IMG/VR virus record: IMGVR_UViG_3300011113_000805
Location: 193,179 to 257,178 of that record
Length of the DNA stretch: 64,000 bases
Reading direction: 5' to 3' (one strand)
Position 1 is the first letter of the stretch, and the number at the start of each line of letters is the position of its first letter. The notes below the pieces were generated by a model that worked only from the letters and a program-made list of their open reading frames with translations, was not told the DNA's origin and searched no databases. Made by a program: the position numbers and the translations under genes. This document shows positions 16,921-34,092 of the stretch, one piece after another.

Positions 16921-16994
16921 CTCCGTGATGAGATCTGTTATTACGGTGCCGGCACTTTGTACAGGCACCGAGAGAAAATAGCTGAACTATTTTC
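16921..16994 (-). promoter_or_regulatory. Type B element with UP-region inverted repeat GAAAATAG-N5-CTATTTTC containing the upstream stop codon
   Basis: Representative full-length copy; palindromic spacer gtgccggcac. Confidence 0.75.
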
Positions 16995-17466
16995 CGGACT
17001 GGAGGTGCTCCACAAGCCACTTGGCTTGGGTTTCATATGAAGCAGCCTCAACAGCCCAAGCAGCCCGAGCAGCAGACCGAGCAGCCCAAGCAGCATCAGC
17101 AGCCCAAGTAGCATCAGCTGCAGCCCAAGCAGCCCAAGCAACATCAGCAGCATCAGCAGCAGCAGCCTCAGCAGCCCCAGCAGCAGCTTCCAGCTCCTCA
17201 GGAGTAACACTCTGCTGGTCCTCCAGCCATCGATCGACCATGGTCAGAGCATGGATCGACCTCTGATCAGGCTCATCCACCAGCAGCGTCAGCATCTCAC
17301 CGGCACACCACCGAGCAAATGCGACCAAGTCTCGGTGGGTGATGATGCCAATGTGCTCCCGGCCTTGCAGGAGCACGCAATTCTGTCTGAGGTTTCGTAT
17401 CAGTTCGACCTCAGGCAGAATCGACTGCTCACCGGTGACGGGATCGATCAAAGTGTACTGGTGCAT
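16987..17466 (-). CDS. Ala-rich Imm5-like paralog
   Basis: Family motifs; start MHQYTL. Confidence 0.8.
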   Translation of the reverse strand: MHQYTLIDPVTGEQSILPEVELIRNLRQNCVLLQGREHIGIITHRDLVAFARWCAGEMLTLLVDEPDQRSIHALTMVDRWLEDQQSVTPEELEAAAGAAEAAAADAADVAWAAWAAADATWAADAAWAARSAARAAWAVEAASYETQAKWLVEHLQSGK

Positions 17467-17538
17467 GTCGAGCTCCGTGATGAGATCTGTTATTATGGCT
17501 AAGCCACTTTGTACAGGTCCTGGGAGCAAATAGTTGAA

Positions 17539-18018
17539 CTATTTTCCGGACTGGAGGTGTTCAACCAGCCACTGAGTTTGAACTTCATATGAAGTAGCCC
17601 TGGCAGCAGTCTGAGCAGTCCGAGCAGCCCAAACAGCAGCCTCAGCAGCCCGATCAGCAGCCATGGTAGTAGTCCAAGAAGCAGCCTCAGCAGCCCGATC
17701 AGCAGCCATGGTAGCAGTCCGAGCATCATAAGCAGCAGCTACCAGCTCCTCAGAAGTGACGCTCTTCTCGTTCTCCAGCCACCGGTCCACCAAGGACAGG
17801 GCATGTGTCACCTTCAGGTCAGGCTCATCCACCAGCAGCGTCAACGTCTCACCGGCACACCATCGAGCAAAGGCGACCAGGTCCCGGTGGGTGATGATGC
17901 CCAGATGCTCATTCCCTCGAAGAAGGATGCAGCTGAGCTGGAGGTTTCGGGTGAGCTCAAGCTCCGACAGAGTCGTCTGCTCACCGGTGACGGGATCGAT
18001 CAAAGTGTACTGGTGCAT
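17539..18018 (-). CDS. Ala-rich Imm5-like paralog
   Basis: Family motifs; start MHQYTL. Confidence 0.8.
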   Translation of the reverse strand: MHQYTLIDPVTGEQTTLSELELTRNLQLSCILLRGNEHLGIITHRDLVAFARWCAGETLTLLVDEPDLKVTHALSLVDRWLENEKSVTSEELVAAAYDARTATMAADRAAEAASWTTTMAADRAAEAAVWAARTAQTAARATSYEVQTQWLVEHLQSGK

Positions 18019-18090
18019 GTCAAGCTCCGTGATGAGATCTGTTATTATGGCTGAGCCACTTTGTACAGGTCCTGGGAGCAAATAGTTGAA

Positions 18091-18567
18091 CTATTTTCCG
18101 GACTGGAGGTGCTCCACAAGCCACTGAGCTTGAGACTCGTACAAAAGCCCACGACTCCCAGCATCCCAAGCAGCCCCGGCAGCAGCCCAAGCAGCAGCCC
18201 CAGCAGTCCGAGCAGCCTCAGCAGCCTCAGCAGCAGCCCGAGCAGCCCGAGCAGCCTGAGCAGCCCGAGCAGCAGCCCCAGCAGCAGCTTCCAGCTCCTC
18301 AGGTGTAACACTCTGCTGATCCTCAAGCCACTGGTCCACCAAGGACAGGGCATGTGTCACCTTCAGGTCAGGCTCATCCACCAGCAGCGTCAGCGTCTCA
18401 CCGGCACACCATCGAGCAAAGGCGACCAGGTCCCGGTGGGTGATGATGCCCAGATGCTCATTCCCTCGAAGAAGGATGCAGCTGAGCTGGAGGTTTCGGG
18501 TGAGGTCGATCTCAGACAGAAAAGTTTGCTTACCGGTGACAGAATCAACCAAGGTGTACCGGGACAT
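18091..18567 (-). CDS. Ala-rich Imm5-like paralog
   Basis: Family motifs. Confidence 0.8.
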   Translation of the reverse strand: MSRYTLVDSVTGKQTFLSEIDLTRNLQLSCILLRGNEHLGIITHRDLVAFARWCAGETLTLLVDEPDLKVTHALSLVDQWLEDQQSVTPEELEAAAGAAARAAQAARAARAAAEAAEAARTAGAAAWAAAGAAWDAGSRGLLYESQAQWLVEHLQSGK

Positions 18568-18638
18568 GAGAACTCCGTGATGAGATCTGTTATTTCGGCT
18601 GAGTCGCTTTGTACAGGCGCCGACGGAAAATAGCTGAA

Positions 18639-19172
18639 CTATTTTCCGGACTGGAGGTGCTGCTCAAACCACTGAGCTTGGACTTCGTATGAAGTAGCTC
18701 CGGCAGCAGCTCCAGCAGCCCGAGCAGCCCAAACAGCAGCCTCAGCAGCCCGATCAGCAGCCATGGTAGCAGCCCAAGAAGCAGTCTGAGCAGCAGCATG
18801 AGCAGCCCAAGCAGCAGTCTGAGCAGCAATATGAGCAGCCCAAGAAGCCCGAGCAGCAGCCCAAGCAGCCTGAGCAGCTGCTTCAGCAGCGTCTTTCAGC
18901 TCCTCATTGCTGAGGCTCCTCTCATCCTCCAGCCACCGGTCCACCAAGGACAGGGCATGTGTCACCTTCAGGTCAGGCTCATCCACCAGCAGCTTCAGCA
19001 TCTCACCGGCACACCATCGAATGAAGATGACCAGGTCCCGGTGGGTGATGATGCCCAGATGCTCATTCCCTCGAAGAAGGAGGTAGCCAATCTGGAGGTT
19101 TCGGGTGAGCTTAAGCTCCGACAGAGTCCACTGCCGGCCGGTGGCAGGATCAATCAAAGTGTATTTAGGCAT
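18639..19172 (-). CDS. Ala-rich Imm5-like paralog
   Basis: Family motifs. Confidence 0.8.
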   Translation of the reverse strand: MPKYTLIDPATGRQWTLSELKLTRNLQIGYLLLRGNEHLGIITHRDLVIFIRWCAGEMLKLLVDEPDLKVTHALSLVDRWLEDERSLSNEELKDAAEAAAQAAWAAARASWAAHIAAQTAAWAAHAAAQTASWAATMAADRAAEAAVWAARAAGAAAGATSYEVQAQWFEQHLQSGK

Positions 19173-19260
19173 TTCCGAAGCTCCGTGATGAGATCTGTTA
19201 TTATGGCTGAGCCACTTTGTACAGGTCCCGGGAGCACTTTTCTAAAAATGTTTACTCCTT

Positions 19261-19425
19261 CGCTAGTACCGTACGAAGTTTCAACTGTGCATAAAAACCT
19301 CAGTGATGTCTGGATCGCGGTACGAGGTTAGCCTTACCGGTGGTTACCCTCACCGGTGAAAACATTTTCCAGTCAATGTTTTCAATTAAGGTGTCAATCG
19401 GAAACCCGATGACTGGTAACACGAA
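19261..19425 (-). ncRNA. Candidate structured non-coding RNA
   Basis: ORF-free 165 nt with four stems and two loop-bulge pairings; strand inferred from context. Confidence 0.35.
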
Positions 19426-19427
19426 GC

Positions 19428-19613
19428 TCAGCTAGCTGATACTCCGGAGGCCTTGATCTTCAGAAGGAGGGCAGCGTTGGCTGCAATGATGCCACCAACA
19501 ATCGGCAGCAGTACCGGTGCTGAAGGGAGAAGAAGTTGGATGAAACACCACCAACCAAAACCTGCGCCGGTGCCAATGAGGGTGCCAAGAATATGCGACT
19601 TCAGCGTTTCCAT
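19428..19613 (-). CDS. Small two-TM membrane protein
   Basis: Start METLKSH after GGAG; two hydrophobic segments. Confidence 0.55.
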   Translation of the reverse strand: METLKSHILGTLIGTGAGFGWWCFIQLLLPSAPVLLPIVGGIIAANAALLLKIKASGVSAS

Positions 19614-19628
19614 GCTCTCTCCTTTGAA

Positions 19629-19713
19629 TGGTAGCCCCAGCCGGACTCGAACCGGCACGCTCAATGAACAAGAGATTTTGAGTCTCTCGCGTCTTCCGTT
19701 CCGCCATGGGGCC
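19629..19713 (-). tRNA. trnL: tRNA-Leu(CAA)
   Basis: Cloverleaf, long variable arm, CT-CAA-AA loop, GTTCGA, CCA. Confidence 0.92.
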
Positions 19714-19720
19714 AATGAAG

Positions 19721-19795
19721 TGGTGGGTCATCCGAGACTCGAACTCGGAACTAACGGATTAAGAGTCCGCTACTCTACCATTGAGTTAATGACCC
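19721..19795 (-). tRNA. trnK: tRNA-Lys(CTT)
   Basis: CT-CTT-AA loop, T arm, CCA. Confidence 0.95.
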
Positions 19796-19800
19796 GAAGA

Positions 19801-19876
19801 TGGTGGGTTGTCTGGGGCTTGAACCCAGGGCCTACGGATTAAAAGTCCGCTGCTCTACCGACTGAGCTAACAACCC
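19801..19876 (-). tRNA. trnK: tRNA-Lys(TTT)
   Basis: CT-TTT-AA loop, CCA. Confidence 0.95.
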
Positions 19877-19880
19877 ATAA

Positions 19881-19968
19881 TGGAGGAAGCGGTGGGATTC
19901 GAACCCACGATCCCTTTCAGGATGCCGGTTTTCAAGACCGGAGCCTTAAACCGCTCGGCCACGCTTCC
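19881..19968 (-). tRNA. trnS: tRNA-Ser(TGA)
   Basis: CT-TGA-AA loop, long variable arm, CCA. Confidence 0.95.
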
Positions 19969-19972
19969 AAGA

Positions 19973-20047
19973 TGGTACTCCCAACGGGAATCGAACCCGT
20001 GTTACCGGAGTGAAAATCCGGTGTCCTGACCGTTAGACGATGGGAGC
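19973..20047 (-). tRNA. trnE: tRNA-Glu(TTC)
   Basis: TT-TTC-AC loop, CCA. Confidence 0.95.
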
Positions 20048-20050
20048 GAA

Positions 20051-20124
20051 TGGTTGGGGTGGTAGGATTCGAACCCACATAGCCTGATCCAAAGTCAGGC
20101 GTCCTGCCGTTGGACGACACCCCA
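20051..20124 (-). tRNA. trnQ: tRNA-Gln(TTG)
   Basis: CT-TTG-GA loop, U1-A72, CCA. Confidence 0.95.
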
Positions 20125-20141
20125 GTAATGAAAGAATGAAG

Positions 20142-20218
20142 TGGTGCTGAAGGTGGGAATCGAACCCACGGCCTGCGGTTTACAAGACCGCTGCTCTGGC
20201 CAACTGAGCTACTTCAGC
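20142..20218 (-). tRNA. trnT: tRNA-Thr(TGT)
   Basis: CT-TGT-AA loop, CCA. Confidence 0.95.
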
Positions 20219-20460
20219 ATTTTCTCGGCCGTCGCCAGCGACTCATTCACATGAACCCAGCTGCCCTCCCGCAGGAGGATGACACAACCTCCGATAGGCC
20301 AATCCAACAGGGTCGGCGGCAACATGTTCCAGCTGCTCACCCCTGGAGGAAGAGGGTAAGGAATGCAGGTGAGGATCTCATCCCGAGTAAAGACCCGTTC
20401 GGGATAAGTCCACCCGCCGCCGGGGCCAGGGGTAACAATGCTGAAGGTGAGCTCTTCCAC
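20209..20460 (-). CDS. Hypothetical protein inside the tRNA cluster
   Basis: GTG start after GAGG; type A promoter at about 20482-20510; stop lies within tRNA-Thr. Confidence 0.5.
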   Translation of the reverse strand: MEELTFSIVTPGPGGGWTYPERVFTRDEILTCIPYPLPPGVSSWNMLPPTLLDWPIGGCVILLREGSWVHVNESLATAEKMLK

Positions 20461-20542
20461 GTCGACGTCCTCAGGATTAGAATATAATCACTTTGGTGAT
20501 TTTGAACAGGCGGTGCCTGCACTTTCTTCAACTTTTCTTGAG

Positions 20543-20618
20543 TGGCTCCGGCAACAGGACTCGAACCTGTGACCCGCGGATTAACAGTCCGCTGCTCTAC
20601 CGACTGAGCTATGCCGGA
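20543..20618 (-). tRNA. trnN: tRNA-Asn(GTT)
   Basis: CT-GTT-AA loop, CCA. Confidence 0.95.
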
Positions 20619-20623
20619 ATAAG

Positions 20624-20700
20624 TGGTCTCCTCGACAGGACTTGAACCTGTGACCCCCGCGTTAGGAATGCGGTGCTCTATCCAACTGAGCTACGAGGAG
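20624..20700 (-). tRNA. trnR: tRNA-Arg(CCT)
   Basis: TT-CCT-AA loop, A31-C39 mismatch, CCA. Confidence 0.9.
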
Positions 20701-20740
20701 GGGTCGACCACCACCAGGCCCGGTGGTCATGGGCCACGAC

Positions 20741-21835
20741 TCACTTCTTCTTGTCGTTGATGGCCTGGGCGGCCTGGATGACGCTCATGATCTGGTCCTT
20801 CACCAGACCGTGAAACATCTTGATGTTGTTGCTGTTGCCGCTGCTCATGACACCGCTGTGCAGCGCCATCTTGCACTCACCGGTGAGGATGTCGAAGAAC
20901 TTCTTGAGGTTCCCCGCCTGGGCCAGGGTCCACTTGTTCTCCTTCGAGTGGTCCTTGATCTTTTCGATGATCGCCATCTTGCGCTCGGTGCTGAGCTCAC
21001 CGATACGGGCCTCCACCTTGGACCACCGGTTGAGGACGTCCTCCGCCGTGATGACGCTGCTGTAGTTCTTGACAAAGTCGACCAGGGCCGCGGAGGCCTC
21101 GACACCAACGAACCCCAGGGAGAGGGGGTAGAGGATGGCAGGAGGATTGCCACCGCATTCGGTGAGCTCGATGGCGGCCGCCTTCAGAGCACGGTCGAGC
21201 ATCGCCCAGGAGCGCTGGCTGGGAGCCACCTTGCCGGGCTCCACGGCCTTGGTGGGGCGGAGGTGAGCAGGCTGCAGCCGAATGAAGTCGATCAGCAGTT
21301 CATTGATGTCGCCCTCGGTCTTCGCCCAAACGAGCCAGTCCTCCACCGAGGGCTTGAACTCGACCACCCAGAACCGGCTCAGGAGGGCCGGGTCCATCTC
21401 GGAGACGGTGTAGTCACCGCCCCAGTTCACTGCCGCAACCACCTGGGTGCCCGGGTGCAGGCGCTTGGGCTTGCCGTCGGGACCGGACCCGAGCTCACGA
21501 TCCAGGACGATCTGGAACATGCTGTTCAGCACGCCGGGCAGGCCGCGGTTGAGCTCATCGAGGAAGAGGACGCAGGGCTCGTTGCAGGCCCGAACGTACC
21601 ACGACGGCAGCGCGAAGGAGGCGACACCGGTTTCCTTCGTACGCTCGAGGTCGGGGTAGCCGACGACATCACCTTCGGACATCGTGGAGGCACGCACGTC
21701 GATGAGCTCGAGGCCGCGGCGGTGGGCGAGCTGGTGAACGAGCTGGGACTTGCCAACACCGTGGTCGCCGCGGATGAGCACAGCCTGTGCGGCCGGGAGT
21801 GCATTGAGGCAGGTGACGAGGGTCTTCGCGTCCAT
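20741..21835 (-). CDS. MoxR-like AAA+ ATPase
   Basis: Walker A GDHGVGKS, Walker B LFLDELNR, MDPALLSRF. Confidence 0.88.
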   Translation of the reverse strand: MDAKTLVTCLNALPAAQAVLIRGDHGVGKSQLVHQLAHRRGLELIDVRASTMSEGDVVGYPDLERTKETGVASFALPSWYVRACNEPCVLFLDELNRGLPGVLNSMFQIVLDRELGSGPDGKPKRLHPGTQVVAAVNWGGDYTVSEMDPALLSRFWVVEFKPSVEDWLVWAKTEGDINELLIDFIRLQPAHLRPTKAVEPGKVAPSQRSWAMLDRALKAAAIELTECGGNPPAILYPLSLGFVGVEASAALVDFVKNYSSVITAEDVLNRWSKVEARIGELSTERKMAIIEKIKDHSKENKWTLAQAGNLKKFFDILTGECKMALHSGVMSSGNSNNIKMFHGLVKDQIMSVIQAAQAINDKKK

Positions 21836-21947
21836 GATGACGTCCTTTTCCTGAGGGTTTGTGGGGTTTCGGAACCATTCCGCCCCAACAAGATGAATAT
21901 AATCACTTTCGGTCAAGTTGAACAGGTACCGGAGCACCTTTTTGCAA

Positions 21948-22250
21948 CTATTTTCCGATCAACTTGAAATGCCTGATGTGCAACTCGAGGATCTCGCCCT
22001 CGTACATGACCTTCACATACACGTTGCGGAGGGCAAGGTTATCGGTGGCCACCATCCCCAGCCCGAAGATCCAGACCGTCGGCCCTTCGACAATGACGCC
22101 AATGGCGCCGCGACCCATGTGGGGAATCGAAACCAACGCGCCGGGAACCCAGGCTTTGTTGGTGATCGTCCGGTTCTGTCCAGGACCCTTCTGGTGAACC
22201 ACCCGTTTCTTGGGCTGAATGGGCTTTTCACTCAGTGTGCGACGCTTCAT
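21948..22250 (-). CDS. Hypothetical protein
   Basis: ORF whose TAG lies in the UP element of the next promoter. Confidence 0.55.
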   Translation of the reverse strand: MKRRTLSEKPIQPKKRVVHQKGPGQNRTITNKAWVPGALVSIPHMGRGAIGVIVEGPTVWIFGLGMVATDNLALRNVYVKVMYEGEILELHIRHFKLIGK

Positions 22251-22441
22251 CAGGGGCTCCTCGAATAGAAACGTATGCGATTTTTCGTCAGAGAGCAGGA
22301 CATCTTGTGTCCACCGCGCGGATATTGTTCAGATGCTCCCTCGCGCCGACCAGGACATCCTGGGCAGTCTTCGTGCTCAGGCCAGTCCTTGCCATCCGCC
22401 TGCCGGGTGGCCTTGTTGTCGAAGTCATCTTCGTCGTTCAT
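22250..22441 (-). CDS. Small hypothetical protein
   Basis: Type B element upstream. Confidence 0.5.
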   Translation of the reverse strand: MNDEDDFDNKATRQADGKDWPEHEDCPGCPGRREGASEQYPRGGHKMSCSLTKNRIRFYSRSP

Positions 22442-22538
22442 ATTCCTCTCCGCGATGATATCTGTTATTATGGTCGGAGGGTTTTGTACAGGTCCGGGGA
22501 CACCTTTTTTGAAGGAATTTTCCCCGGACCTGCACCGG

Positions 22539-23288
22539 TCAGGACTCCTCGGAAGCCGCCACCTCGAAGCCGTGACGGCCCAGGCTCAGCCAGCTGGTCC
22601 GACCGGTACCGCCGAAGCGGTTCTTGGTCACCTCGAACTTGCGATGACCGATGAGGGTCTTGTCCTTCTTCTCCCAGCCGAGGTGGATGTGGCAGTCGAT
22701 CATGTGCTTCATCTTGTTGCTGCCGGCGAAGGTGCCGCCCTTCGTCACCTGGCCGATGGTGATGACGTTGGTGAAGTTCTCCTTCGCCCAGGTGGTGAGC
22801 TTCTCCAGGGAGCGCTCGGCGGTCCAGCAGGTGATCCGGCCGGTGTCGAACTTGCCATCATCCAGGCACTGGAGGGAGTCGACCATGAGGAAGAAGGGCT
22901 TGCCCTTGTTCTCGGGACGATTGCGGATGGCGTCCGCCGCCTCGATGAGCTTGTCGACGTGGGTCTCACCGCCGACGAGGAAGTTGGGGTCGATGCCGAG
23001 GCGGTCCACGGTGCGCTTCACCTGGAAGAGGCTCTCCTCCGCCGTGTTGAAGAGGACCACGCTGCCGTTCTCGGTGAGGCCGGAGGCCATCGTCAGGAGG
23101 GCCGTGGTCTTGCCGGCGCCGGGCTCGCCGGTGAACATCGTCACCATCGACGGGGTGAACCCCTCGCCACCGAGGCCCTCATCGATCCACTCGATGCCGG
23201 AGAGGTGACGCTTCAGGAGCTCCATCGGCACGCGAACGTCGTTGATGTTGGTACCAACCGCGAAGGTGTCGGAGAACGAGATACGCAT
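22539..23288 (-). CDS. radA: RadA/Sms-like RecA-fold ATPase (no Zn finger, no Lon-like domain)
   Basis: GEPGAGKT, AEES, VDSLQ, GQVTKGG.FAG, KNRFG signature. Confidence 0.8.
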   Translation of the reverse strand: MRISFSDTFAVGTNINDVRVPMELLKRHLSGIEWIDEGLGGEGFTPSMVTMFTGEPGAGKTTALLTMASGLTENGSVVLFNTAEESLFQVKRTVDRLGIDPNFLVGGETHVDKLIEAADAIRNRPENKGKPFFLMVDSLQCLDDGKFDTGRITCWTAERSLEKLTTWAKENFTNVITIGQVTKGGTFAGSNKMKHMIDCHIHLGWEKKDKTLIGHRKFEVTKNRFGGTGRTSWLSLGRHGFEVAASEES

Positions 23289-23434
23289 GTGTATGATGTC
23301 CTTTTCCTGAGGGTTTGTGGGGTTCCGGAACCATTCCGCCCCAACAAGATGAATATAATCACTTTCGGGTCAGTGGGACAGGTCTCCGGAGCACCTTTTT
23401 GCACATTTTTGTGCAGTGCTCCGGAGATAGCGTG

Positions 23435-23638
23435 TCACCGCCGGCGCCCGACAGAACCGGCAGAGGCATTGAGAATGGACTCGTACTCCCGATCATCATC
23501 GTCCTGGAGCGCTCGAAGCGCGGAGATAATGCGATCGAGGTCCCCGCTTTCGAGGTGGCCATCAGTCGACAGACTGACATAGCCTTCCTTGTCACGATCG
23601 ATGTACACAATCACAGAACCAATGGGCATGTTCTTCAT
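23435..23638 (-). CDS. Hypothetical protein
   Basis: Start MKNMPIG after GGAG. Confidence 0.55.
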   Translation of the reverse strand: MKNMPIGSVIVYIDRDKEGYVSLSTDGHLESGDLDRIISALRALQDDDDREYESILNASAGSVGRRR

Positions 23639-23784
23639 GAGACGCTCCGGCGCAGGGAGGAACCATTCCGCCCCAACATGTACTGTTATTTCGGTGGGTG
23701 CACTTTGTACAGGTCTCCGGAGCACCTTTTTGCACATTTTTGTGCAATGCTCCGGAGATAGCATGTCACCGACGACGCCCTATG

Positions 23785-24045: not shown

Positions 24046-24140
24046 TGCTGACTCCGTATGTGAGAGGAAACCATCAACCAACATGATCTGTTATTATGGT
24101 GTCGGCACTTTGTACAGGCACCGTGAGCAAATAGTTGAAA

Positions 24141-24659
24141 CTATTTTCCGGACTGGAGATGCTCGACCCACCACTGGGCCTGGGCTTCATATGAAGTGTA
24201 ATCCCGAGAAACCTGAGAAGTAGCCATGGCTGCATTTGAAGCCCCGTCACCATACACAGCTGCACGCTGCGCGGCAGCCTGGGCAGTCCAAGTGGCAGTT
24301 CGGGCAGCAACAAAAGCAACCAGTGGCGCAGCATCAGTAATAGCAGGAGCAGCAGCCCAAGCAGCAGCACGAGCAGCCGCTTCCAGCTCCTCAGAAGTGA
24401 CGCTCTTCTCATCTTCAAGCCACCGGTCCACCAAGGACAATGCATGGGCCACCCTCTGATTAGGCTCGCCTTTCAATCGAGCCAGCGTCTCATTGGTGCA
24501 CCATCGAGCGAAGAGAACTAAGTCTCGGTGAGTGACGATACCGAGGTGCTCCTGGTCTCGGAAGAGAATACAGTTGAGCCTGATATTTTGGGTAAGCTCA
24601 AGCTCCGACAGCGTGTGCTGCTCGCCGGTGACAGGATCGATCAGGGTGTACCGGGCCAT
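24141..24659 (-). CDS. Ala-rich Imm5-like paralog
   Basis: Family motifs; start MARYTL. Confidence 0.8.
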   Translation of the reverse strand: MARYTLIDPVTGEQHTLSELELTQNIRLNCILFRDQEHLGIVTHRDLVLFARWCTNETLARLKGEPNQRVAHALSLVDRWLEDEKSVTSEELEAAARAAAWAAAPAITDAAPLVAFVAARTATWTAQAAAQRAAVYGDGASNAAMATSQVSRDYTSYEAQAQWWVEHLQSGK

Positions 24660-24733
24660 GAGAACTCCGTGATGAGATCTGTTATTATGGTGCCCGCACT
24701 TTGTACAGGCTCCGGAGCACCTTTTTGCAAAAA

Positions 24734-25198
24734 TTATTGAGCCGACCTCAGGTGCTCCACCAGCCATTGGGCTTGGGCTTCGAAGGAAACACCGGCAGAG
24801 TTATTAGCAGCCCATGCAGCAGACCCAGCAACATCAGCAGCGCCGGCAGCACTAGAAGCAGCCCAAGCAGCCCGCGCAGCAACAGCACCAGGGCAAGCAA
24901 CATCAGCAGCGGCAGCAGCCTGTTTCAGCTCCTCACTGGAGGCAGAACCCGGGTCGATCAGCCACTTGTCGACCAGGCCCAGCGCAGTATAGACTTCAGG
25001 GGGAACCGTGTGACACTGAGCAAGAGTCTTCTCAACACACCACCGACAGAAGGAGACAACATCGCGATGTGTGATGACGCCGATGTGTTCATCCCCACGA
25101 AGGAGGATATGATTGACCCGCATATGATGTGTCAGTTCCGACGCAGCTACCGTCGACGTGCCACCGGTGAATGGATTCAGGAGGGTATACCGGGTCAT
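24734..25198 (-). CDS. Ala-rich Imm5-like paralog
   Basis: Family motifs; start MTRYTL; TAA stop. Confidence 0.8.
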   Translation of the reverse strand: MTRYTLLNPFTGGTSTVAASELTHHMRVNHILLRGDEHIGVITHRDVVSFCRWCVEKTLAQCHTVPPEVYTALGLVDKWLIDPGSASSEELKQAAAAADVACPGAVAARAAWAASSAAGAADVAGSAAWAANNSAGVSFEAQAQWLVEHLRSAQ

Positions 25199-26043: not shown

Positions 26044-26185
26044 CGGGCCCCCTATGCATAGTGTCACATACACCCGGGCCCCCTGGTCATATGCACGGGC
26101 CCCCTGGTCATATGCACGGGCCCCCTGACTGTACGCGGGCCCCCTAGGGGCACACGGCCCCCTGTATATGCTTGGGCGCCCTAGG
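26044..26185. repeat. GGGCCCCCT-cored direct repeats (21-bp period at 26075, 26096, 26117)
   Basis: cgggccccctggtcatatgca twice, plus degenerate copies. Confidence 0.85.
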
Positions 26186-26872: not shown

Positions 26873-26895
26873 GTGTGGATTAGACCTCTAGAGCG

Positions 26896-27366
26896 TTATG
26901 CGATATTTTCAGCACTTTCGATGTACGACTCGCGAGTGAAGATGCGATAGACACCAGACCCAATAAGCGCAGTCACAATGATCTCCCGGTCGGCTGGTTC
27001 ATAAGGCTCATATGAGTCATAGGAATCGTCACTGTATGAATTCGTGCTTGAGACGAGTGAGTCATCGATAATGTAGGTAAAGGCGTCATAACATTCATTG
27101 ATGTCGGTATGTTTAACAGCATCCAAGATGACAATGAGATGAGGGCTGAAATCCTCGGTGTCGACGATTGGGATGTTCCGGCGAGGGTTTCTAGTGCCAG
27201 GCTCAAGCCAGAGAAGGGCGCCCTTAAGGAAGAAAAGGCCACCGGGGTTCTGTTTAATGGCTTCAAGCATCATTTGGGTATCGCATCCTTTAAAGGATCT
27301 ATCCAGAGCGGGGGTCGAAGTCAATGATTTTTCTATCCCGCCGAGTAGGTTATCATCAGTGATCAC
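26896..27366 (-). CDS. Hypothetical protein (start uncertain)
   Basis: ORF track; 5' end overlaps the tandem repeat. Confidence 0.5.
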   Translation of the reverse strand: MITDDNLLGGIEKSLTSTPALDRSFKGCDTQMMLEAIKQNPGGLFFLKGALLWLEPGTRNPRRNIPIVDTEDFSPHLIVILDAVKHTDINECYDAFTYIIDDSLVSSTNSYSDDSYDSYEPYEPADREIIVTALIGSGVYRIFTRESYIESAENIA

Positions 27367-27530
27367 TGTGTCACATTGTGCCGGATCGAATGAAAGTATC
27401 TATCCAGAGCGGGGGTCGGAGTCAATGATTTTTCTATCCCGGGGGCCCTAGGATTCTGGTGGATCGCTGTGTCACATTGTGCCGGATCGAATGAAAGTAT
27501 CTATCCGGAGCGGGGGTCGGAGTCAATCAT
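27297..27530. repeat. 101-bp-period tandem repeat (about 2.3 copies)
   Basis: atctatccRgagcgggggtcgRagtcaat at 27297, 27398, 27499. Confidence 0.85.
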
Positions 27531-27873: not shown

Positions 27874-27907
27874 TGTTCATCCTTGCACATCATTGAACAT
27901 TTTTAGC

Positions 27908-29259: not shown

Positions 29260-29529
29260 GCAGCATATTCTTCTTCATTCAGATAAATAGAGCTTTCTTC
29301 TTCTAGCATAAGACTCTTTATAAAGTCTGGCACTTCTGCATAAGTCCAGTTTTGTGCTTCGATTCTGCTCTGGAGCGGTGCATTTTCTAAGAAATAATGG
29401 AGTCTTGAGGAGTGGCTGAGACATTCAATGCATTCTTCATTTAGTTTTGCGCCACACTCATTGCAAGGACAAAAGCATTGACTGGATTATTCAGCATCAA
29501 TCCTGCTCCGGAGAGTACATTTTGCATCT
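29232..29529 (-). pseudogene. 5'-disrupted Cys-rich (Zn-finger-like) gene remnant
   Basis: Open frame CPCNECGAKLNEEC...WKSEAKCL preceded by an in-frame TAA and no start. Confidence 0.4.
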
Positions 29530-30015
29530 TTATTGACCGGACTGGAGGTGTTCAACCAGCCACTGAGCTTGGGCTTCATATGAAACAGCCCAAGTAGCAC
29601 GAGCAGCCCAAGTAGCATGAACAGTAGCCCGAGCAACATCAGAAGCAGCCCAAGCAGCCCGAGCAGCAGCCCAAGCAGTAGCCCGAGCAGCAGCCCGAGC
29701 AGTAGCCCCAGCATCCCAAGCATCAAAAGCAGCAGCTACCAGCTCCTCAGAAGTGATGCTCTTCTCATTCTCCAGCCACCGGTCCACCAAGGACAGGGCA
29801 TGTGTCACAGTGTGATCCGGTTCACATTTCAGTCGAGCCAAAATCTTACCAGCGCACCACCGAGTGAAGATGACTAGGTCCCGGTGGGTGATGATTCCCA
29901 AATGCTCCCGGCCTTGAAGAAGAACGCAATTGAGCTGAAGGTTTTGGGTGAGCTCTGCCTCAAACAGAGTCGTCTGCCGGCCGGTGACCGGATCAATCAA
30001 TGTGTATTGGGCCAC
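29530..30015 (-). CDS. Ala-rich Imm5-like paralog
   Basis: Family motifs; GTG start. Confidence 0.8.
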   Translation of the reverse strand: MAQYTLIDPVTGRQTTLFEAELTQNLQLNCVLLQGREHLGIITHRDLVIFTRWCAGKILARLKCEPDHTVTHALSLVDRWLENEKSITSEELVAAAFDAWDAGATARAAARATAWAAARAAWAASDVARATVHATWAARATWAVSYEAQAQWLVEHLQSGQ

Positions 30016-30088
30016 GTCAAATCTCCGTGATGAGATCTGTTATTTCAGCACCGGCACTTTGTACAAGCGCCGAGAGAAAATAGCTGAA

Positions 30089-30574
30089 CTATTTTCCGGA
30101 CTGAAGGTGTTCAACCAGCCACTGAGCCTGAGACTTGTAAGAAAGCCCACGATCCTCAGCAGACCGAGCAACATCAGCAGCAACCCAAATAGCCCGAGCA
30201 GCCCGAGCAGCAGCCCAAGCAGCATCAGCAGCAGCCCAAATAGCCCGAGCAGCGTCAGCAGCATCAACAGCAGCCCAAGCAACCTCAGCGACGGCTTCCA
30301 GCTCCTCAGGAGTAACTCTCTTTTCATCCTCCAGCCACCGATCGACCAGGGTCAAGGCATACTGTGCCTCAGGAGTCGATGTGCCCTTCGCTCGAGCAAT
30401 TGCCTCCATGGCACACCACCGAGCAAAGGCGACCAAGTCTCGGTGGGTGATGATACCAATGTGCTCCCGGCCTTGCAGGAGGATGTAGTTAGGAGCGAGG
30501 TTTTGTGTCAGCTCGACCTCAGACAGAGTCGTCTGCTGGCCGGTAATAGGATCGATCAGTGTGTACAGGTGCAT
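30089..30574 (-). CDS. Ala-rich Imm5-like paralog
   Basis: Family motifs; start MHLYTL. Confidence 0.8.
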   Translation of the reverse strand: MHLYTLIDPITGQQTTLSEVELTQNLAPNYILLQGREHIGIITHRDLVAFARWCAMEAIARAKGTSTPEAQYALTLVDRWLEDEKRVTPEELEAVAEVAWAAVDAADAARAIWAAADAAWAAARAARAIWVAADVARSAEDRGLSYKSQAQWLVEHLQSGK

Positions 30575-30647
30575 GTCGAGCTCCGTAATGAGATCTGTTA
30601 TTACAGTGCCGGCACTTTGTACAGGCACCGCGAGCAAATAGTCGAAA

Positions 30648-31151
30648 CTATTTTTCGGACCGCAGATGCTCCACCAGCCACTGAGCTTGGACTTCGTACG
30701 AAGCAGTCTGAGTAGCCCGAGTAACCCAAGCAGTCCGAGCAGCAGCCCGAGTAGCCCAAGCAACAGCCTCAGCAGCAGCCCAAGCAGCCCCAGCAACAGC
30801 CTCAGTAGTAGCTCCAGCAGCCCAAGCAACAGCCTCAGCAGCCTGAGCAGCCCCAGCAGCCCGAGCAGCAGCTTCCAGCTCCTCAGGAGTAACACTCTGC
30901 TGGTCCTCCAGCCACCGGTCCACCAAGGACAGGGCATGTGTCACCTTCAGGTCAGGCTCATCCACCAGTCGAGCCAGCATCTTACCAGCGCACCACCGAG
31001 CAAAGGCGACCAAGTCTCGGCGGGTGATGATGCCAATGTGCTTCCTATCTTGAAGAAGAATGCAATTGAGCTGAAGGTTTCGTGTCAGCTCTGCCTCAGA
31101 CAGAGTCGTCTGCTGGCCGGTGGCAGGATCGATCAGTGTGTATTGGGCCAT
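30648..31151 (-). CDS. Ala-rich Imm5-like paralog
   Basis: Family motifs. Confidence 0.8.
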   Translation of the reverse strand: MAQYTLIDPATGQQTTLSEAELTRNLQLNCILLQDRKHIGIITRRDLVAFARWCAGKMLARLVDEPDLKVTHALSLVDRWLEDQQSVTPEELEAAARAAGAAQAAEAVAWAAGATTEAVAGAAWAAAEAVAWATRAAARTAWVTRATQTASYEVQAQWLVEHLRSEK

Positions 31152-31225
31152 GTCAAATCTCCGTGATGAGACCTGTTATTTCAGTACCGGCACTTTGTAC
31201 AGGTCCTGGGAGCAAATAGTCGAAA

Positions 31226-31768
31226 CTATTTTCCGGACTGGAGGTGTTCAACCAGCCAACATGCTTGGGCTTCATATGAAGCAATCTCAGTAGCCTCAGC
31301 AGCCCAAGCAGCCCGAGCAGCAGCCCAAGCAGCCTGAGCAGCAAACCGAGCAGCCTCAGCAGCAGCCCAAGCAGCCTCAACAGCCCAAGCAGCCCGAGCA
31401 GCAGCCCAAGCAGCCCCAGCAACAGCCTGAGCGGCAGTCCAAGCAGCAGCCTCAGCAGTCCGAGCAGCCCAAGCAGCATCAGCAGCAGCTTTCAGCTCCT
31501 CAGGAGTAACACTCTGCTGATCCTCCAGCCACTGGTCGACCATGGTCAGAGTATGTGTCACCTTCAGGTCAGGCTCATCCACCAGTCGAGCCAGCATCTT
31601 ACCAGCGCACCACCGAGCAAAGGCGACCAAGTCTCGATGGGTGATGATGCCAATGTGCTCCCCATCTCGAAGGAGGATGCAGCCAATCTGGAGGTTTCGG
31701 GTGAGCTCTACCTCAGACAGAGTCGTCTGCCGGCCGGTGGCAGGATCGATCAGTGTGTATTGGGCCAT
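31226..31768 (-). CDS. Ala-rich Imm5-like paralog
   Basis: Family motifs. Confidence 0.8.
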   Translation of the reverse strand: MAQYTLIDPATGRQTTLSEVELTRNLQIGCILLRDGEHIGIITHRDLVAFARWCAGKMLARLVDEPDLKVTHTLTMVDQWLEDQQSVTPEELKAAADAAWAARTAEAAAWTAAQAVAGAAWAAARAAWAVEAAWAAAEAARFAAQAAWAAARAAWAAEATEIASYEAQACWLVEHLQSGK

Positions 31769-31841
31769 GTCAAATCTCCGTGATGAGACCTGTTATTTCA
31801 GTACCGGCACTTTGTACAGGTCCCGGGAGCAAATAGCTGAA

Positions 31842-32327
31842 CTATTTTCCGGACTGGAGGTGCTCAACAAACGTTTGTGCTTGAGCTTCATAAGTGATGA
31901 TAGCATGATAATCAAGTGACCAGGCTATTTCAGCAATAATCTCCAAGGCCCAATTAGCATTGGCAATAACCCGCACCGGAGAAGCAATAATCCAATCCGG
32001 TGACCATATAGAAGTCTCACCATTGGTGATCACATATCCTGCAATGAAGTCAAGTTGTTCACAGGACAGGCTATTTGGATCCTCTAACCATTGATCGGCT
32101 AGCTGTATAGCATACAAAGAATCTGGTTCCGGTAGTTCGATCATCCGATTCTTTATCACATCTGCACACCGTCGAGCGAAGACGACCAAGTCTCTATATG
32201 TAACGACACCAATATGGTTATTCCCTTGAAGAAGAATGCAATTAAGCATAAGATTTTGCAATAGCTCGGTTTTAGGTACAGTTTTGCTAAAGCCTGTGAA
32301 AGGATTGATTAGAGTGTAATGGATCAT
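31842..32327 (-). CDS. Divergent Imm5-like paralog (non-repetitive middle)
   Basis: Family N- and C-termini; Ala tract replaced by AT-rich sequence. Confidence 0.75.
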   Translation of the reverse strand: MIHYTLINPFTGFSKTVPKTELLQNLMLNCILLQGNNHIGVVTYRDLVVFARRCADVIKNRMIELPEPDSLYAIQLADQWLEDPNSLSCEQLDFIAGYVITNGETSIWSPDWIIASPVRVIANANWALEIIAEIAWSLDYHAIITYEAQAQTFVEHLQSGK

Positions 32328-32399
32328 AGGAATTCCATGATGAGATCTGTTATTACAGTGCCGGCACTTTGTACAGGCACCGCGAGCAAATAGTCGAAA

Positions 32400-32525
32400 C
32401 TATTTTTCGGACCGCAGATGCTCCACCAGCCACTGAGCTTGAGACTTGTTGTGCTCCTCATCTCGAAGGAGGATGCAATCCTGCCTGAGGTTTCGTGTCA
32501 GCTCGACCTTGGACAGGTCGCCCAC
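32400..32525 (-). pseudogene. In-frame deletion remnant of an Imm5-like paralog
   Basis: LSKVELTRNLRQDCILLRDEEH fused to KSQAQWLVEHLRSEK*. Confidence 0.7.
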
Positions 32526-32533
32526 CGGCCGGG

Positions 32534-32959
32534 TCAGGCCACCCTCTTCGATCCGCCCTTCTTGGGGGCAACCGGGCCGCGGAAGACCAGGGTGTTGACC
32601 ACTCCCAAGTACCCGATCGGCTCCCCCTCAGCAGCCTTCTGCATCGCCTCGGAGGCTACCTCGTCGAGGCCTTCGGACCCTGGCACGGAGAATGCCACGT
32701 CCACGTCAGAGTCGTCACGGAACCTGTTCCTCTCAAGAACGGAGCCGATGATCCACACGGACACCTCCTCCGCTGGGAGGTCGAGGACCTCCGCGGCCAG
32801 TTCCTTGAGGGAGGGTGCGGCGCCGGCCACGGCGCGGATGGCATCCTTTCTGTACGCGTCGAGGTCGGGGTCTTGGGAGGCAAGGACCTCGTTGAGGGAA
32901 TGTGTCACTTCTTCACGGATGATAGACTTGAGCTTGGATAACTTTATCTTCATGGGCAA
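32534..32959 (-). CDS. Leader-bearing minimal nucleotidyltransferase (Pol-beta/MNT fold)
   Basis: IIGSVL...DSDVDV; leader LSKLKSIIREEV...LNE. Confidence 0.75.
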   Translation of the reverse strand: MPMKIKLSKLKSIIREEVTHSLNEVLASQDPDLDAYRKDAIRAVAGAAPSLKELAAEVLDLPAEEVSVWIIGSVLERNRFRDDSDVDVAFSVPGSEGLDEVASEAMQKAAEGEPIGYLGVVNTLVFRGPVAPKKGGSKRVA

Positions 32960-33042
32960 TAAGTATGTCTGCCGCCGAGAAACCCATTAAAGAATAAAAG
33001 CGGGTCAAGTCGTGCGGGCTGTTTGGAGCAACTTTTGTATCT

Positions 33043-33525
33043 TTATTGACCAGACTTCAGGTGTTCCACAAACCACTGTGCCTGAGACTTGTAAGAAAGC
33101 CCACGATCCTCAGCAGACCGAGCAACATCAGCAGCAGCCTCAGCAGCGTCAGCAGCATCAACAGCAGCCCAAATAGCCTCAGCAGCAGCCCAAGCAGCCC
33201 GAGCAGCAGCCTCAGCACCAGCCCGAGCAGCAGCCTTAGCAGCGTCTTTCAACTCCTCAGAAGTGATGCTTAGCTCATCATCCAGCCACTGGTCGACCAT
33301 GGTCAGAGCATGCGTCACCTTCAGGTCAGGCTCATCCACCAGTCGAGCCAGCATCTTACCAGCGCACCACCTAGCAAAGGCGACCAAGTCTCGGTGGGTG
33401 ATGATGCCAATGTGCTCCCCATCTCGAAGAAGGATGCAGTTGAGCTGGAGGTTTCGTGTCAGCTCGACCTCAGACAGAGTCGTCTGCCAGCCGGTGGCAG
33501 GATCAATCAAAACATAGTCAGGCAT
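33043..33525 (-). CDS. Ala-rich Imm5-like paralog
   Basis: Family motifs. Confidence 0.8.
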   Translation of the reverse strand: MPDYVLIDPATGWQTTLSEVELTRNLQLNCILLRDGEHIGIITHRDLVAFARWCAGKMLARLVDEPDLKVTHALTMVDQWLDDELSITSEELKDAAKAAARAGAEAAARAAWAAAEAIWAAVDAADAAEAAADVARSAEDRGLSYKSQAQWFVEHLKSGQ

Positions 33526-33600
33526 GTCCAGGACTCCGTGATGAGATCTGTTATTTCGGCTGAGTCGCTTTGTACAGGCACCGCGAGCAAATAGTCGAAA

Positions 33601-34092
33601 CTATTTTTCGGACCGCAGATGCTCCACCAGCCAACGTGCTTGGGCTTCATATGAAGCAATCTCAGCAGCAATCTCGACAGCAGCCCAAGTAGCATGAGCA
33701 GCGGCCTGAGCAGCCGTGGTAGCAGCCCAAGCAGCCCGAGCAGCAGCCCAAGCAGTAGCCCGAGCAGCAGCCCGAGCAGCAGCCCCAGCATCCCAAGCAT
33801 CAAAAGCAGCAGCTTCCAGCTCCTCATTGCTGACGCTCTGTTGGTCCTCCAACCACCGGTCGACCAGGATCAAGGCATACTGCGTCTCAGGAGCAGGTGT
33901 GCCCTTCACTCGAGCCAGTGTCTCAACTGCTAGCCATCGAACAAAGACAACCAGATCCCTATGGGTAACAATGCCAATATGCTCATTCTCTCGAGCAAGA
34001 ATGTCATTGCTGGCTATTTTTCGTGTTAGATCATGCTCTTGTACAATTTTGTTCATTCCCGTAATGGGATTAATTAGTGTATACTCTGTCAT
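33601..34092 (-). CDS. Ala-rich Imm5-like paralog
   Basis: Family motifs. Confidence 0.8.
   Translation of the reverse strand: MTEYTLINPITGMNKIVQEHDLTRKIASNDILARENEHIGIVTHRDLVVFVRWLAVETLARVKGTPAPETQYALILVDRWLEDQQSVSNEELEAAAFDAWDAGAAARAAARATAWAAARAAWAATTAAQAAAHATWAAVEIAAEIASYEAQARWLVEHLRSEK

What the first reader, a model, noticed from the sequence alone, without database searches (positions are those of the whole stretch)
16987..34092. Paralogs are segmental mosaics of each other
Identical blocks are shared in conflicting patterns. MHQYTLIDPVTGEQ: 16987 and 17539. LSCILLRGNEHL..GETLTLLVDEPDLK: 17539 and 18091. TMAADRAAEAAVWAAR: 17539 and 18639. AAFDAWDAGA: 29530 and 33601. ADVARSAEDRGLSYKS: 30089 and 33043. 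AR.KGT..PE.QYAL: 30089 and 33601. EIASYEAQA: 31226 and 33601. This points to combinatorial diversification by gene conversion.
Basis: seen in the sequence. Interest (0 to 1): 0.7.

Follow-up and report, generated by a model that had tools for sequence, protein, structure and literature searches.

The report
Recombining gene-cassette family in a phage
A T4-like freshwater jumbo phage carries 14 copies of one small gene, and recombination has shuffled them into patchworks of each other, so the set differs almost completely between otherwise near-identical phages.

Summary
All eight shared peptide blocks are exact. They are also exact at the DNA level, synonymous sites included: 50-172 nt tracts sit inside copies that are otherwise 58-91% identical.

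One tree does not fit. Segment-specific topologies gain 72 lnL units, against 3.5±2.7 in 48 single-tree simulations. The same result holds in 15 copies from an independently assembled relative.

There are 14 intact ones, a decayed remnant and a distant member, in three clusters on the minus strand.

The window is a variable region of a T4-like phage that encodes a RecA/UvsX-type recombinase. Each copy is a cassette behind a conserved ~45-nt leader element. Cassette gains and losses between related phages are bounded exactly by that element, as with T4-type PeSL shuffling.

Flanking DNA is 91-98% identical between two phages, but the copies have no one-to-one orthologues. The exceptions are the two most divergent copies.

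The protein has a small beta domain and a divergent DUF6931/Imm5-like helical domain. Its function is untested.

No long reads were available, so the linkage of blocks in this particular contig is unverified.

The parts
16422..16913 (-). Copy A (163 aa)
16987..17466 (-). Copy B (159 aa; real ATG at 17466, not the TTG at 17529)
17539..18018 (-). Copy C (159 aa; real ATG at 18018). Its 5' end is B-like, its middle is D-identical, and one repeat block is E-identical.
18091..18567 (-). Copy D (158 aa)
18639..19172 (-). Copy E (177 aa)
24141..24659 (-). Copy F (172 aa from the ATG at 24659)
24734..25198 (-). Copy G (154 aa; divergent)
29530..30015 (-). Copy H (161 aa; GTG start)
30089..30574 (-). 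Copy I (161 aa; real ATG at 30574)
30648..31151 (-). Copy J (167 aa; the modelled copy)
31226..31768 (-). Copy K (180 aa)
31842..32327 (-). Copy L (161 aa). It is the most divergent copy and has no Ala-rich repeats. It is 99% identical to R4 of the relative, so it has stayed orthologous.
32400..32530 (-). Decayed remnant copy. N-domain residues ~9-37 are joined directly to the C-tail. Its 5' part is replaced by the inserted ORF 32534-32959.
32534..32959 (-). Nucleotidyltransferase-like ORF inserted within the array (weak Pfam hits only)
33043..33525 (-). Copy M (160 aa)
33601..34092 (-). Copy N (163 aa). Its N-domain is orthologous to R1 (93%). CDS 271-372 (window 33721-33822) is H-like.
10776..11291 (-). 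Distant family member O (171 aa), preceded by the same upstream element
17784..17955 (-). Conversion tract in C, identical to D 18333-18504 (172 nt, 1 mismatch)
29644..29749 (-). Conversion tract in H, matching N 33721-33826 (106 nt, 2 mismatches). The N-domains of the two copies are 60% identical.
30126..30182 (-). Tract in I, identical to M 33080-33136 (57 nt, 0 mismatches)
31524..31682 (-). Tract in K, matching M 33281-33439 (159 nt, 5 mismatches)
16921..16965 (-). Upstream element of A: CCTGTACAAAG-N10-WWAATAACAGATCTCATCACGGAG, then 5-8 nt to the ATG. The same element has its first base at 17517 (B), 18069 (C), 18617 (D), 19225 (E), 24709 (F), 25248 (G), 30067 (H), 30625 (I), 31203 (J), 31820 (K), 32377 (L) and 33578 (M).
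22448..22492 (-). Element before a non-family gene. It stands as a single copy here. In the relative, two direct copies bracket the R11 cassette.
14454..14498 (-). Element before a non-family gene. It stands as a single copy here. In the relative, two copies bracket the R14-R15 cassettes.
16356..16400 (-). Partial element downstream of copy A (first box only). It marks the low-coordinate edge of cluster A-E. Further elements have their first base at 11340, 12611, 13776, 23713 and 24118.
20741..21937 (-). MoxR-type AAA_5 ATPase, on one side of cluster A-E
14548..15972 (-). DUF2201 metallopeptidase/VWA-like protein, on the other side of cluster A-E

Best explanation
The window is a hyperplastic (variable) region of a T4-like freshwater jumbo phage.

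It holds 14 intact copies, one decayed copy and one distant copy of a 154-180 aa gene. The protein has three parts:
- a small N-terminal beta domain;
- a helical domain that is a divergent relative of DUF6931/Imm5-like proteins, whose middle is built from degenerate Ala/Trp-rich repeats (DNA periods 9, 12, 21 and 30 nt);
- a conserved C-terminal tail.

Each copy is a cassette that follows a conserved ~45-nt element ending in a GGAG ribosome-binding site.

Homologous recombination acts at three levels. It is presumably driven by the phage's own RecA/UvsX-type recombinase.
1. Exchange between direct copies of the element adds, deletes and relocates whole cassettes.
2. Short tracts of about 50-250 nt are copied between coding regions. 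This re-assorts a limited set of segment variants into mosaic genes.
3. Slippage or unequal exchange in the repeat DNA changes protein length.

Shown: the mosaicism, its statistical significance, its recurrence in two other phages, element-bounded cassette indels, and purifying selection on the N-domain.

Inferred: which enzyme does it; that the element is a promoter or leader; and that the proteins form a repertoire of binders or inhibitors aimed at variable host targets.
For: Mosaicism:
- Conflicting nearest neighbours per segment.
- Exact shared DNA tracts.
- PHI-type test p = 0.001; run test; AU tests.
- Parametric bootstrap: 72.0 against 3.5±2.7, 0/48. N-domain only, window: 56.1 against 4.7±3.0, 0/40. 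Relative: 69.5 against 4.8±2.9, 0/40. Both together: 210 against 12.8, 0/24.

Not assembler noise:
- Four independent samples assemble the relative's arrays at 99.98-100% identity.
- A different study using MEGAHIT gives 99.5-99.8%.

Turnover:
- Flanks are 91-98% identical between window and relative, but the best cross-genome N-domain match is 73-88%. The exceptions are L-R4 (99%) and N-R1 (93%).
- Perfect tracts of 117-255 nt occur only within a genome.
- The N/R1/H event is dated by the outgroup.

Cassettes:
- The element occurs 19-22 times, all on the minus strand, only at window 11.3-33.6 kb, and also before non-family genes.
- The R11 and R14-R15 cassettes of the relative are bracketed by two element copies where the window has one.
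- Synteny blocks with a third phage start and end at elements.

Machinery and phage type:
- RecA family match, E 2.3e-63.
- Gp23 capsid match, E 1.6e-63.

Protein:
- AF2 model, pLDDT 78, pTM 0.73.
- AFDB hits to Imm-5-like domain proteins.
- The family profile reaches proteins that pass the Pfam cut-offs for DUF6931 and Imm5_like.
- Median dN/dS is 0.30.
Against: - No long reads. No Nanopore run was listed.
- Logan contigs of the probable source run confirm every local 31-mer but break into pieces of 130-730 nt across the arrays. The linkage of blocks in this contig therefore rests on the original assembler.
- In the second cluster the variable copies have contig depth 21-30, against 40-43 for copy L and the flank. 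This suggests a mix of strains, so part of the contig could be a path through more than one strain.
- The element matches no sigma-70 consensus, and no conserved RNA structure was found. Its promoter role is unproven.
- Window proteins do not reach the Pfam gathering scores for Imm5_like or DUF6931.
- No toxin partner, expression data or target is known.
- Exchange between co-infecting phages may account for the older shared modules.
Confidence: 0.8

Rival explanations
1. Assembly artefact. The mosaics are chimeric paths taken by a short-read metagenome assembler through near-identical repeats or through a mix of strains.
For: - Logan unitigs of the probable source run break at each shared block.
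- Alternative joints and loose ends occur in the arrays.
- Depth is 21-30 in the variable copies against 40-43 in the flanks.
- No long reads were available.
Against: - An assembler can mis-pair flanks at a shared block, but it cannot create the shared block. Every 31-mer of the window is present in the run.
- The same kind of mosaic, equally significant, occurs in a relative whose arrays were assembled identically from four separate samples and nearly identically by another study and assembler.
- It also occurs in a third phage.
- The longest exact repeat in the window family is 111 nt.
Confidence: 0.06
2. The mosaics come mainly from recombination between different co-infecting phages (inter-genomic exchange of cassettes and segments), not from intragenomic gene conversion.
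For: - Segment variants are shared between the window and the relative. For example, K and D match R12/R13 at 94-95% in the last quarter of the N-domain, and F matches R14 at 90% in the first quarter.
- Cassette content differs between three phages.
- Several strains seem to coexist in one sample.
Against: - The longest perfect tracts are all within one genome: R9-R15 255 nt, R14-R15 159 nt, C-D 172 nt with 1 mismatch.
- Non-orthologous cross-genome tracts are at most 99 nt with 3-4 mismatches, which is the background divergence.
Confidence: 0.12
3. No recombination. Selection for a few allowed peptide variants at each position, or mutational convergence in low-complexity Ala-rich sequence, produces the shared blocks.
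For: - The C-terminal half is low-complexity, repetitive DNA.
- The N-domain is under purifying selection.
Against: - Shared tracts are identical at synonymous sites over 50-255 nt.
- The strongest tree conflict lies in the non-repetitive N-domain.
- Simulations on one tree with the fitted rate heterogeneity never approach the observed conflict.
Confidence: 0.01
4. Targeted diversification by a dedicated element: a diversity-generating retroelement, an integron, or a silent-cassette antigenic-variation system.
For: There is a tandem array of variable cassettes separated by a conserved repeat.
Against: - No reverse transcriptase in the 257-kb record.
- No tyrosine integrase.
- Every copy is a full ORF with its own start codon, GGAG and upstream element, so none is a silent donor.
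Confidence: 0.01

Closest known systems
PeSL (promoter-early stem-loop) regulatory cassettes that mediate modular shuffling in hyperplastic regions of T4-type phages (Arbiol et al. 2010, PMC2839356; Comeau et al. 2014, PMC4122927)
   Same: - The phage is T4-like: Gp23 capsid and RecA/UvsX-type gene.
- A short conserved intergenic element is repeated before many small genes in one variable region, all in one orientation.
- Insertions and deletions between close relatives are bracketed by direct copies of it.
- A hairpin precedes the motif.
   Different: - The motif does not match a sigma-70 promoter.
- Most of the hairpins are weak and AT-rich.
- Most of the cargo is one recombining paralogue family rather than unrelated ORFans, so exchange also happens inside the genes.
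- Promoter and terminator activity and mini-circles were not tested.
Imm5 / Imm5_like (PF21805) and DUF6931 (PF22011) helical proteins, and the polyimmunity loci of bacterial polymorphic toxin systems (Zhang et al. 2012, PMC3482391)
   Same: - All-helical domain of similar size.
- The family profile reaches members of both Pfam families.
- AFDB fold hits are named Imm-5-like.
- The nearest ESM Atlas clusters are phage proteins with PF21805.
- The genes are arranged in tandem arrays.
   Different: - The window proteins fall below both gathering scores.
- They carry an extra N-terminal beta domain and an Ala/Trp-rich repeat core.
- They are encoded by a lytic-type phage, and no toxin gene was seen nearby.
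- An immunity function is not shown for them.
Contingency or antigenic-variation gene families that diversify by segmental gene conversion, such as Neisseria pilE/pilS, Borrelia vlsE and Plasmodium var (named from general knowledge, not tested here)
   Same: Short conversion tracts re-assort segment variants among many paralogues and give combinatorial mosaics.
   Different: - Here every copy appears expressible. There is no single expression site and there are no silent cassettes.
- The carrier is a phage.
- The change is seen between lineages that are about 2-9% diverged, not within a clone. Strains 0.2-0.5% apart differ by only one repeat-length change.

Membership tests
Multigene family evolving by ectopic gene conversion / unequal crossing-over | Different segments of the paralogues support significantly different trees | tested here: met
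   - AU tests.
- Parametric bootstrap: 0/48, 0/40, 0/40 and 0/24 simulations reach the observed value.
Multigene family evolving by ectopic gene conversion / unequal crossing-over | Tracts identical at synonymous sites, flanked by divergent sequence | tested here: met
   Tracts of 50-172 nt in the window and up to 255 nt in the relative. An outgroup-dated tract lies in copy N.
Multigene family evolving by ectopic gene conversion / unequal crossing-over | Mosaic linkage confirmed on single molecules | not testable with these tools
   Only k=31 contigs of short-read runs were served, and no Nanopore run was listed.
PeSL-type regulatory cassettes of T4-type phages | Conserved intergenic element repeated in a variable region of a T4-like phage | tested here: met
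   19-22 copies, one strand, window 11.3-33.6 kb only. Gp23 capsid match.
PeSL-type regulatory cassettes of T4-type phages | Indels between close relatives are bounded by the element | tested here: met
   The R11 and R14-R15 junctions were read base by base. Block ends against the third phage fall at elements.
PeSL-type regulatory cassettes of T4-type phages | Strong sigma-70-like early promoter | tested here: not met
   The consensus scan finds no site at the elements. The two boxes are closer together than a -35/-10 pair.
PeSL-type regulatory cassettes of T4-type phages | Stem-loop that terminates transcription | tested here: inconclusive
   Five of the six units folded give weak hairpins or none: -5.6 to -11.5 kcal/mol, z +1.2 to -2.5, the best of them AT-rich. 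One is strong, at -28.4 kcal/mol. The scan finds no intrinsic terminator at these sites.
Pfam PF21805 Imm5_like / PF22011 DUF6931 | Score at or above the Pfam gathering cut-off | tested here: not met
   No hits for window proteins at E <= 0.1. Among 29 family members the best E is 0.0025 for Imm5_like and 2.4e-4 for DUF6931.
Pfam PF21805 Imm5_like / PF22011 DUF6931 | Homology detectable through intermediate sequences | tested here: met
   Hits to the family profile at E about 1e-8 to 1e-12. Of 10 such hits scanned, 4 pass the DUF6931 cut-off and 1 passes the Imm5_like cut-off.
Pfam PF21805 Imm5_like / PF22011 DUF6931 | Same fold | tested here: inconclusive
   - AFDB: Foldseek probability 1.0 but TM 0.43-0.59, over residues 42-165.
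- No PDB match.
Polymorphic-toxin immunity protein | Adjacent cognate toxin gene | not tested
   The Pfam scans of neighbouring ORFs showed no toxin domain, but the whole window was not scanned.
Diversity-generating retroelement | Reverse transcriptase | tested here: not met
   No PF00078 match in the 257-kb record. The record is about 76% complete.
Integron cassette array | Tyrosine integrase | tested here: not met
   No PF00589 match.
Silent-cassette antigenic variation (pilE/pilS type) | One expression locus plus promoterless partial donors | tested here: not met
   All 14 copies are full ORFs. Thirteen have the same upstream element and GGAG; copy N, first in its array, has a different upstream.

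The most novel reading that the evidence does not exclude
The array is a phage-encoded, recombination-generated repertoire of DUF6931/Imm5-like binding proteins. Cassette shuffling at a dedicated leader element, together with segmental gene conversion, continually creates new specificities against variable host toxins or defence effectors. This would be a viral counterpart of bacterial polyimmunity loci and of antigenic-variation families.
Probability: 0.25. Interest if true: 0.75.

Novelty: new variant of a known kind. Interest (0 to 1): 0.55.

Why it matters
Variable regions of T4-like phages are known to swap unrelated small genes at regulatory cassettes. Here the same kind of region is mostly filled with one family, and the family also recombines inside its coding sequence.

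The result is a 14-15-member repertoire that is almost completely reshuffled between phages whose surrounding DNA is 91-98% identical. That rate contrast is the signature of a locus under conflict-driven or recombination-driven turnover.

It singles out an uncharacterised family for functional work: about 370 clusters at 50% identity in 1.84 billion proteins, with no literature found.

It also offers a natural system for measuring tract lengths, homology thresholds and element-mediated cassette exchange in phage recombination. The two most divergent copies stay orthologous, although one of them (N) has still taken an H-like tract in its repeat region.

Tried and rejected
- **Diversity-generating retroelement:** no reverse transcriptase.
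- **Integron:** no tyrosine integrase.
- **Sigma-70 promoters and intrinsic terminators at the intergenic element:** none found.
- **Conserved RNA structure in the element:** RNAalifold gives 4 invariant pairs, -0.5 kcal/mol and no covariation.
- **Related loci in IMG/VR:** the family alignment found none. Relatives came from ENA and NCBI contigs instead.
- **Searching the relative's whole record:** not held.
- **Verifying block linkage with public runs:** only k=31 contigs were served, and they break at the repeats. No Nanopore run was listed.
- **Scaffolds L004 and L005:** they suggested other cassette orders, but they contain N gaps and were set aside.
- **PDB fold search:** nothing significant.
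- **Literature:** no papers for PF21805 or 'Imm5-like'. The Imm5 passages of Zhang 2012 gave no phage-specific information.
- **GC-biased gene conversion as the cause of the high GC:** not supported. N-domain GC3 is high (0.60-0.74), but the equally recombining Ala-rich part has GC3 of about 0.3, and the divergent copies G and O also have high GC3.
- **The first GENECONV-like test:** site permutation is confounded by clustering of conserved sites (66 of 91 pairs 'significant'). I therefore relied on the tree-based parametric bootstrap.

Full report
**Where the window lies.** The window is the last 64 kb of a 257,178-bp IMG/VR virus record that CheckV rates 76% complete. The record encodes a T4 Gp23-type major capsid protein (E 1.6e-63) and a RecA/UvsX-family recombinase (E 2.3e-63). 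It is therefore a T4-like jumbo phage. Runs holding its sequence are viral, riverine, lake and freshwater metagenomes.

**The family.** A search of the phage's own genome with one copy finds 16 places, all inside the window and all on the minus strand. After correcting start codons there are 14 intact copies:
- A-E at 16422-19172;
- F and G at 24141-25198;
- H-L at 29530-32327;
- M and N at 33043-34092.

There is also a decayed remnant at about 32400-32530, with N-domain residues ~9-37 fused directly to the C-tail. Its 5' part is replaced by a nucleotidyltransferase-like ORF. A distant member lies at 10776-11291.

Three of its ORFs are over-extended through the conserved intergenic sequence or a neighbouring gene.

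**Checking the observation.** At DNA level the blocks are exact or nearly exact, including synonymous sites:

| Pair | Length | Mismatches |
|---|---|---|
| C-D | 172 nt | 1 |
| B-C | 117 nt | 2 |
| H-N | 106 nt | 2 |
| K-M | 159 nt | 5 |
| I-M | 57 nt | 0 |
| C-E | 50 nt | 0 |

The N-domains of H and N are only 60% identical. Nearest neighbours change from segment to segment. Copy C, for example, is 97% like B upstream, 99% like D in codons 33-64, and closest to H and J in codons 65-97.

**Formal tests.**
- My PHI-type test gives p = 0.001.
- A GENECONV-type run test gives global P <= 0.001 for C-D and J-K. Because it is confounded by clustered conserved sites, I did not rely on it.
- ML trees for three a-priori segments reject one another. 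The concatenated tree is rejected by two segments, p-AU 0.0024 and 0.00016.
- In a parametric bootstrap, alignments were simulated on the single best tree with the fitted GTR+G model. Segment-specific topologies then gain 3.5±2.7 lnL units (maximum 9.9), against 72.0 observed, 0 of 48 as high.

**Independent replication.** ENA metagenome scaffolds hold a close relative, here called REL, with 15 copies (R1-R15). NCBI assembly GCA_006365115.1 holds a third phage with arrays.
- The N-domain bootstrap gives 56.1 against 4.7±3.0 for the window, 69.5 against 4.8±2.9 for REL, and 210 against 12.8±3.9 for both together. No simulation reaches the observed value.
- REL's arrays are assembled at 99.98-100% identity from four separate samples. 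Another study and assembler gives 99.5-99.8%. The one clear difference is a 150-nt length change in the Ala-rich repeats of R2.
- The protein alignment shows a few discrete variants per segment, combined almost freely. Residues ~53-70 come as LVDEPDLKVTH, SGREPDQ or KGTPAPETQY types. Residues 78-88 come as QQSVTP, EKS(V/I)TS, ERSLSN or ELNITS types.

**Rate and direction.** Single-copy DNA around the arrays is 91-98% identical between window and REL. The best cross-genome N-domain match of most copies is only 73-88%, and copy number and position differ.
- The exceptions are the two most divergent copies, L-R4 (99%) and N-R1 (93%). This is what homology-dependent exchange predicts, since copies too different to pair stay orthologous.
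- Perfect tracts of 117-255 nt (R9-R15, R14-R15, R9-R14, R12-R14) occur only within a genome. Non-orthologous cross-genome tracts are at most 99 nt with 3-4 mismatches. The recent events are therefore intragenomic and post-date the split.
- Copy N gives a dated example. It is 91-98% like R1 over CDS 1-270, then 96-100% like H over 271-372.

**Cassettes and the intergenic element.** Thirteen of the 14 copies are preceded by the element CCTGTACAAAG-N10-WWAATAACAGATCTCATCACGGAG, followed 5-8 nt later by the start codon.
- The element occurs 19-22 times in the genome, always on the minus strand and only between window 11.3 and 33.6 kb. It also stands before non-family genes.
- It does not match a sigma-70 promoter, and no conserved RNA structure was found.
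- In the paralogue units folded, a weak hairpin overlapping the upstream stop codon precedes it.
- Read base by base, REL's R11 cassette and its R14-R15 cassettes are each bracketed by two direct copies of the element, where the window has a single copy joining the same flanks.
- Homology blocks with the third phage begin and end at elements. That phage has no copies between the AAA_5 and DUF2201 genes, where the window has five and REL two.
- This is the signature described for PeSL regulatory cassettes in T4-type phages (PMC2839356, PMC4122927). The motif differs, and here the cargo is itself a recombining family.

**What the protein is.**
- Pfam finds nothing for the window proteins and only sub-threshold Imm5_like and DUF6931 hits across 29 members.
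- An AlphaFold2 model (pLDDT 78, pTM 0.73) shows a four-stranded beta unit (residues 1-41) followed by a helical bundle (44-164). The Ala/Trp-rich helices are modelled with low confidence.
- AFDB fold hits over residues 42-165 include Imm-5-like domain proteins (probability 1.0, TM 0.43-0.59). PDB gives nothing.
- The nearest ESM Atlas clusters are phage proteins with PF21805.
- A profile search of 1.84 billion representatives finds 370 clusters at E <= 1e-3, 55 at <= 1e-10 and 22 at <= 1e-30. Remote hits themselves pass the Pfam cut-offs for DUF6931 (4 of 10) or Imm5_like (1 of 10).
- The helical domain is therefore a divergent member of that superfamily, but the proteins cannot be filed in either Pfam family.
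- The Ala-rich part is degenerate tandem-repeat DNA with periods 9, 12, 21 and 30 nt.
- Median dN/dS in the N-domain is 0.30, so the copies are functional genes.
- I found no literature on this family.

**Assembly caveat.** Logan contigs of the probable source run (X1) cover both clusters without differences, so all local 31-mers exist. They come in pieces of 130-730 nt that end at the shared blocks.
- In cluster 2 the variable copies have depth 21-30, against 40-43 for copy L and the flank. There are also loose ends leading into unlike sequence. This suggests that more than one strain is present.
- No Nanopore run was listed.
- An assembler can mis-pair the flanks of a shared block but cannot invent the block, and REL shows the same pattern reproducibly. 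The phenomenon therefore stands. The exact linkage in this contig is not verified.

**Alternatives excluded.** There is no reverse transcriptase and no tyrosine integrase. There are no silent donors, since all copies are full ORFs with their own leader. Convergence is ruled out by the synonymous-site identity.

**Verdict.** Two things are added. Whole-cassette exchange occurs at a PeSL-like element, and an outgroup comparison shows that the repertoire is reshuffled much faster than the surrounding genome diverges.

The mechanism is of a known kind. The family, the element and the two-level shuffling in a phage are new variants of it. That the proteins form a binder or inhibitor repertoire is an inference, at about 0.25-0.35 probability.

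Noticed in passing
window 14548-15972 (-) and 20741-21937 (-): A DUF2201 metallopeptidase/VWA-like gene and a MoxR-type AAA_5 ATPase gene have GC3 of 0.81 and 0.85, against about 0.35 for backbone genes. This suggests recent acquisition from a high-GC organism. The pair is separated by five family copies here, by two in the ENA relative and by none in the NCBI relative.
   Followed up: partly
window 18061-18633 (+), 20723-21967 (+), 22275-23582 (+), 29948-30715 (+): Long antisense ORFs, Ser/Pro-rich, are by-products of GC-rich or Ala-rich genes on the minus strand. In the ENA record the gene caller placed a 411-aa gene on the strand opposite to the AAA_5 match. In the NCBI relative the AAA_5 gene is called on the same strand as the family.
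   Followed up: partly
window 22539-23288 (-): A 249-aa protein matches the KaiC/RecA-superfamily ATPase family (PF06745, E 3.9e-11) inside the variable region. It is conserved in both relatives. Whether it takes part in recombination is unknown.
   Followed up: no
window 27292-27527: Tandem repeat of a 101-nt unit, 2.3 copies, 88% matches, in a region without an obvious gene. A shorter perfect 21-nt repeat (2.5 copies) lies at 26075-26127.
   Followed up: no
window 34159-34788 (-) and 34752-35849 (-): Two adjacent ORFs share an N-terminal motif, MRITE(H/S)RLRQL(I/V)RETLL. The stretch from about 34790 to 37500, which includes a GNAT acetyltransferase at 35846-36397, has no counterpart in the ENA relative. 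There the flanks are joined.
   Followed up: partly
window 23714-23758 (-): A very stable hairpin (-28.4 kcal/mol, z -8.4) lies directly upstream of one copy of the conserved element. It is much stronger than the hairpins before the family copies.
   Followed up: no
family copies A-N: Within the same genes, N-domain GC3 is 0.60-0.74 (0.39 in L, 0.46 in N), but the Ala-rich half has GC3 of only 0.27-0.42, with GCT and GCA codons preferred. No explanation fits both.
   Followed up: partly
window 29450-34150, run X1: Contig depth is 21-30 for copies H, I, J and M and for the inserted ORF. It is 40-43 for copy L and the flank beyond N. Loose ends at 30817 and 31459 lead into unlike sequence. A second strain with a different cluster may be present in the sample.
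   Followed up: partly
window 54197-55321 (-): An RNA ligase (PHROG 968, E 1.2e-33) lies in the low-GC part of the window, consistent with a T4-like phage.
   Followed up: no
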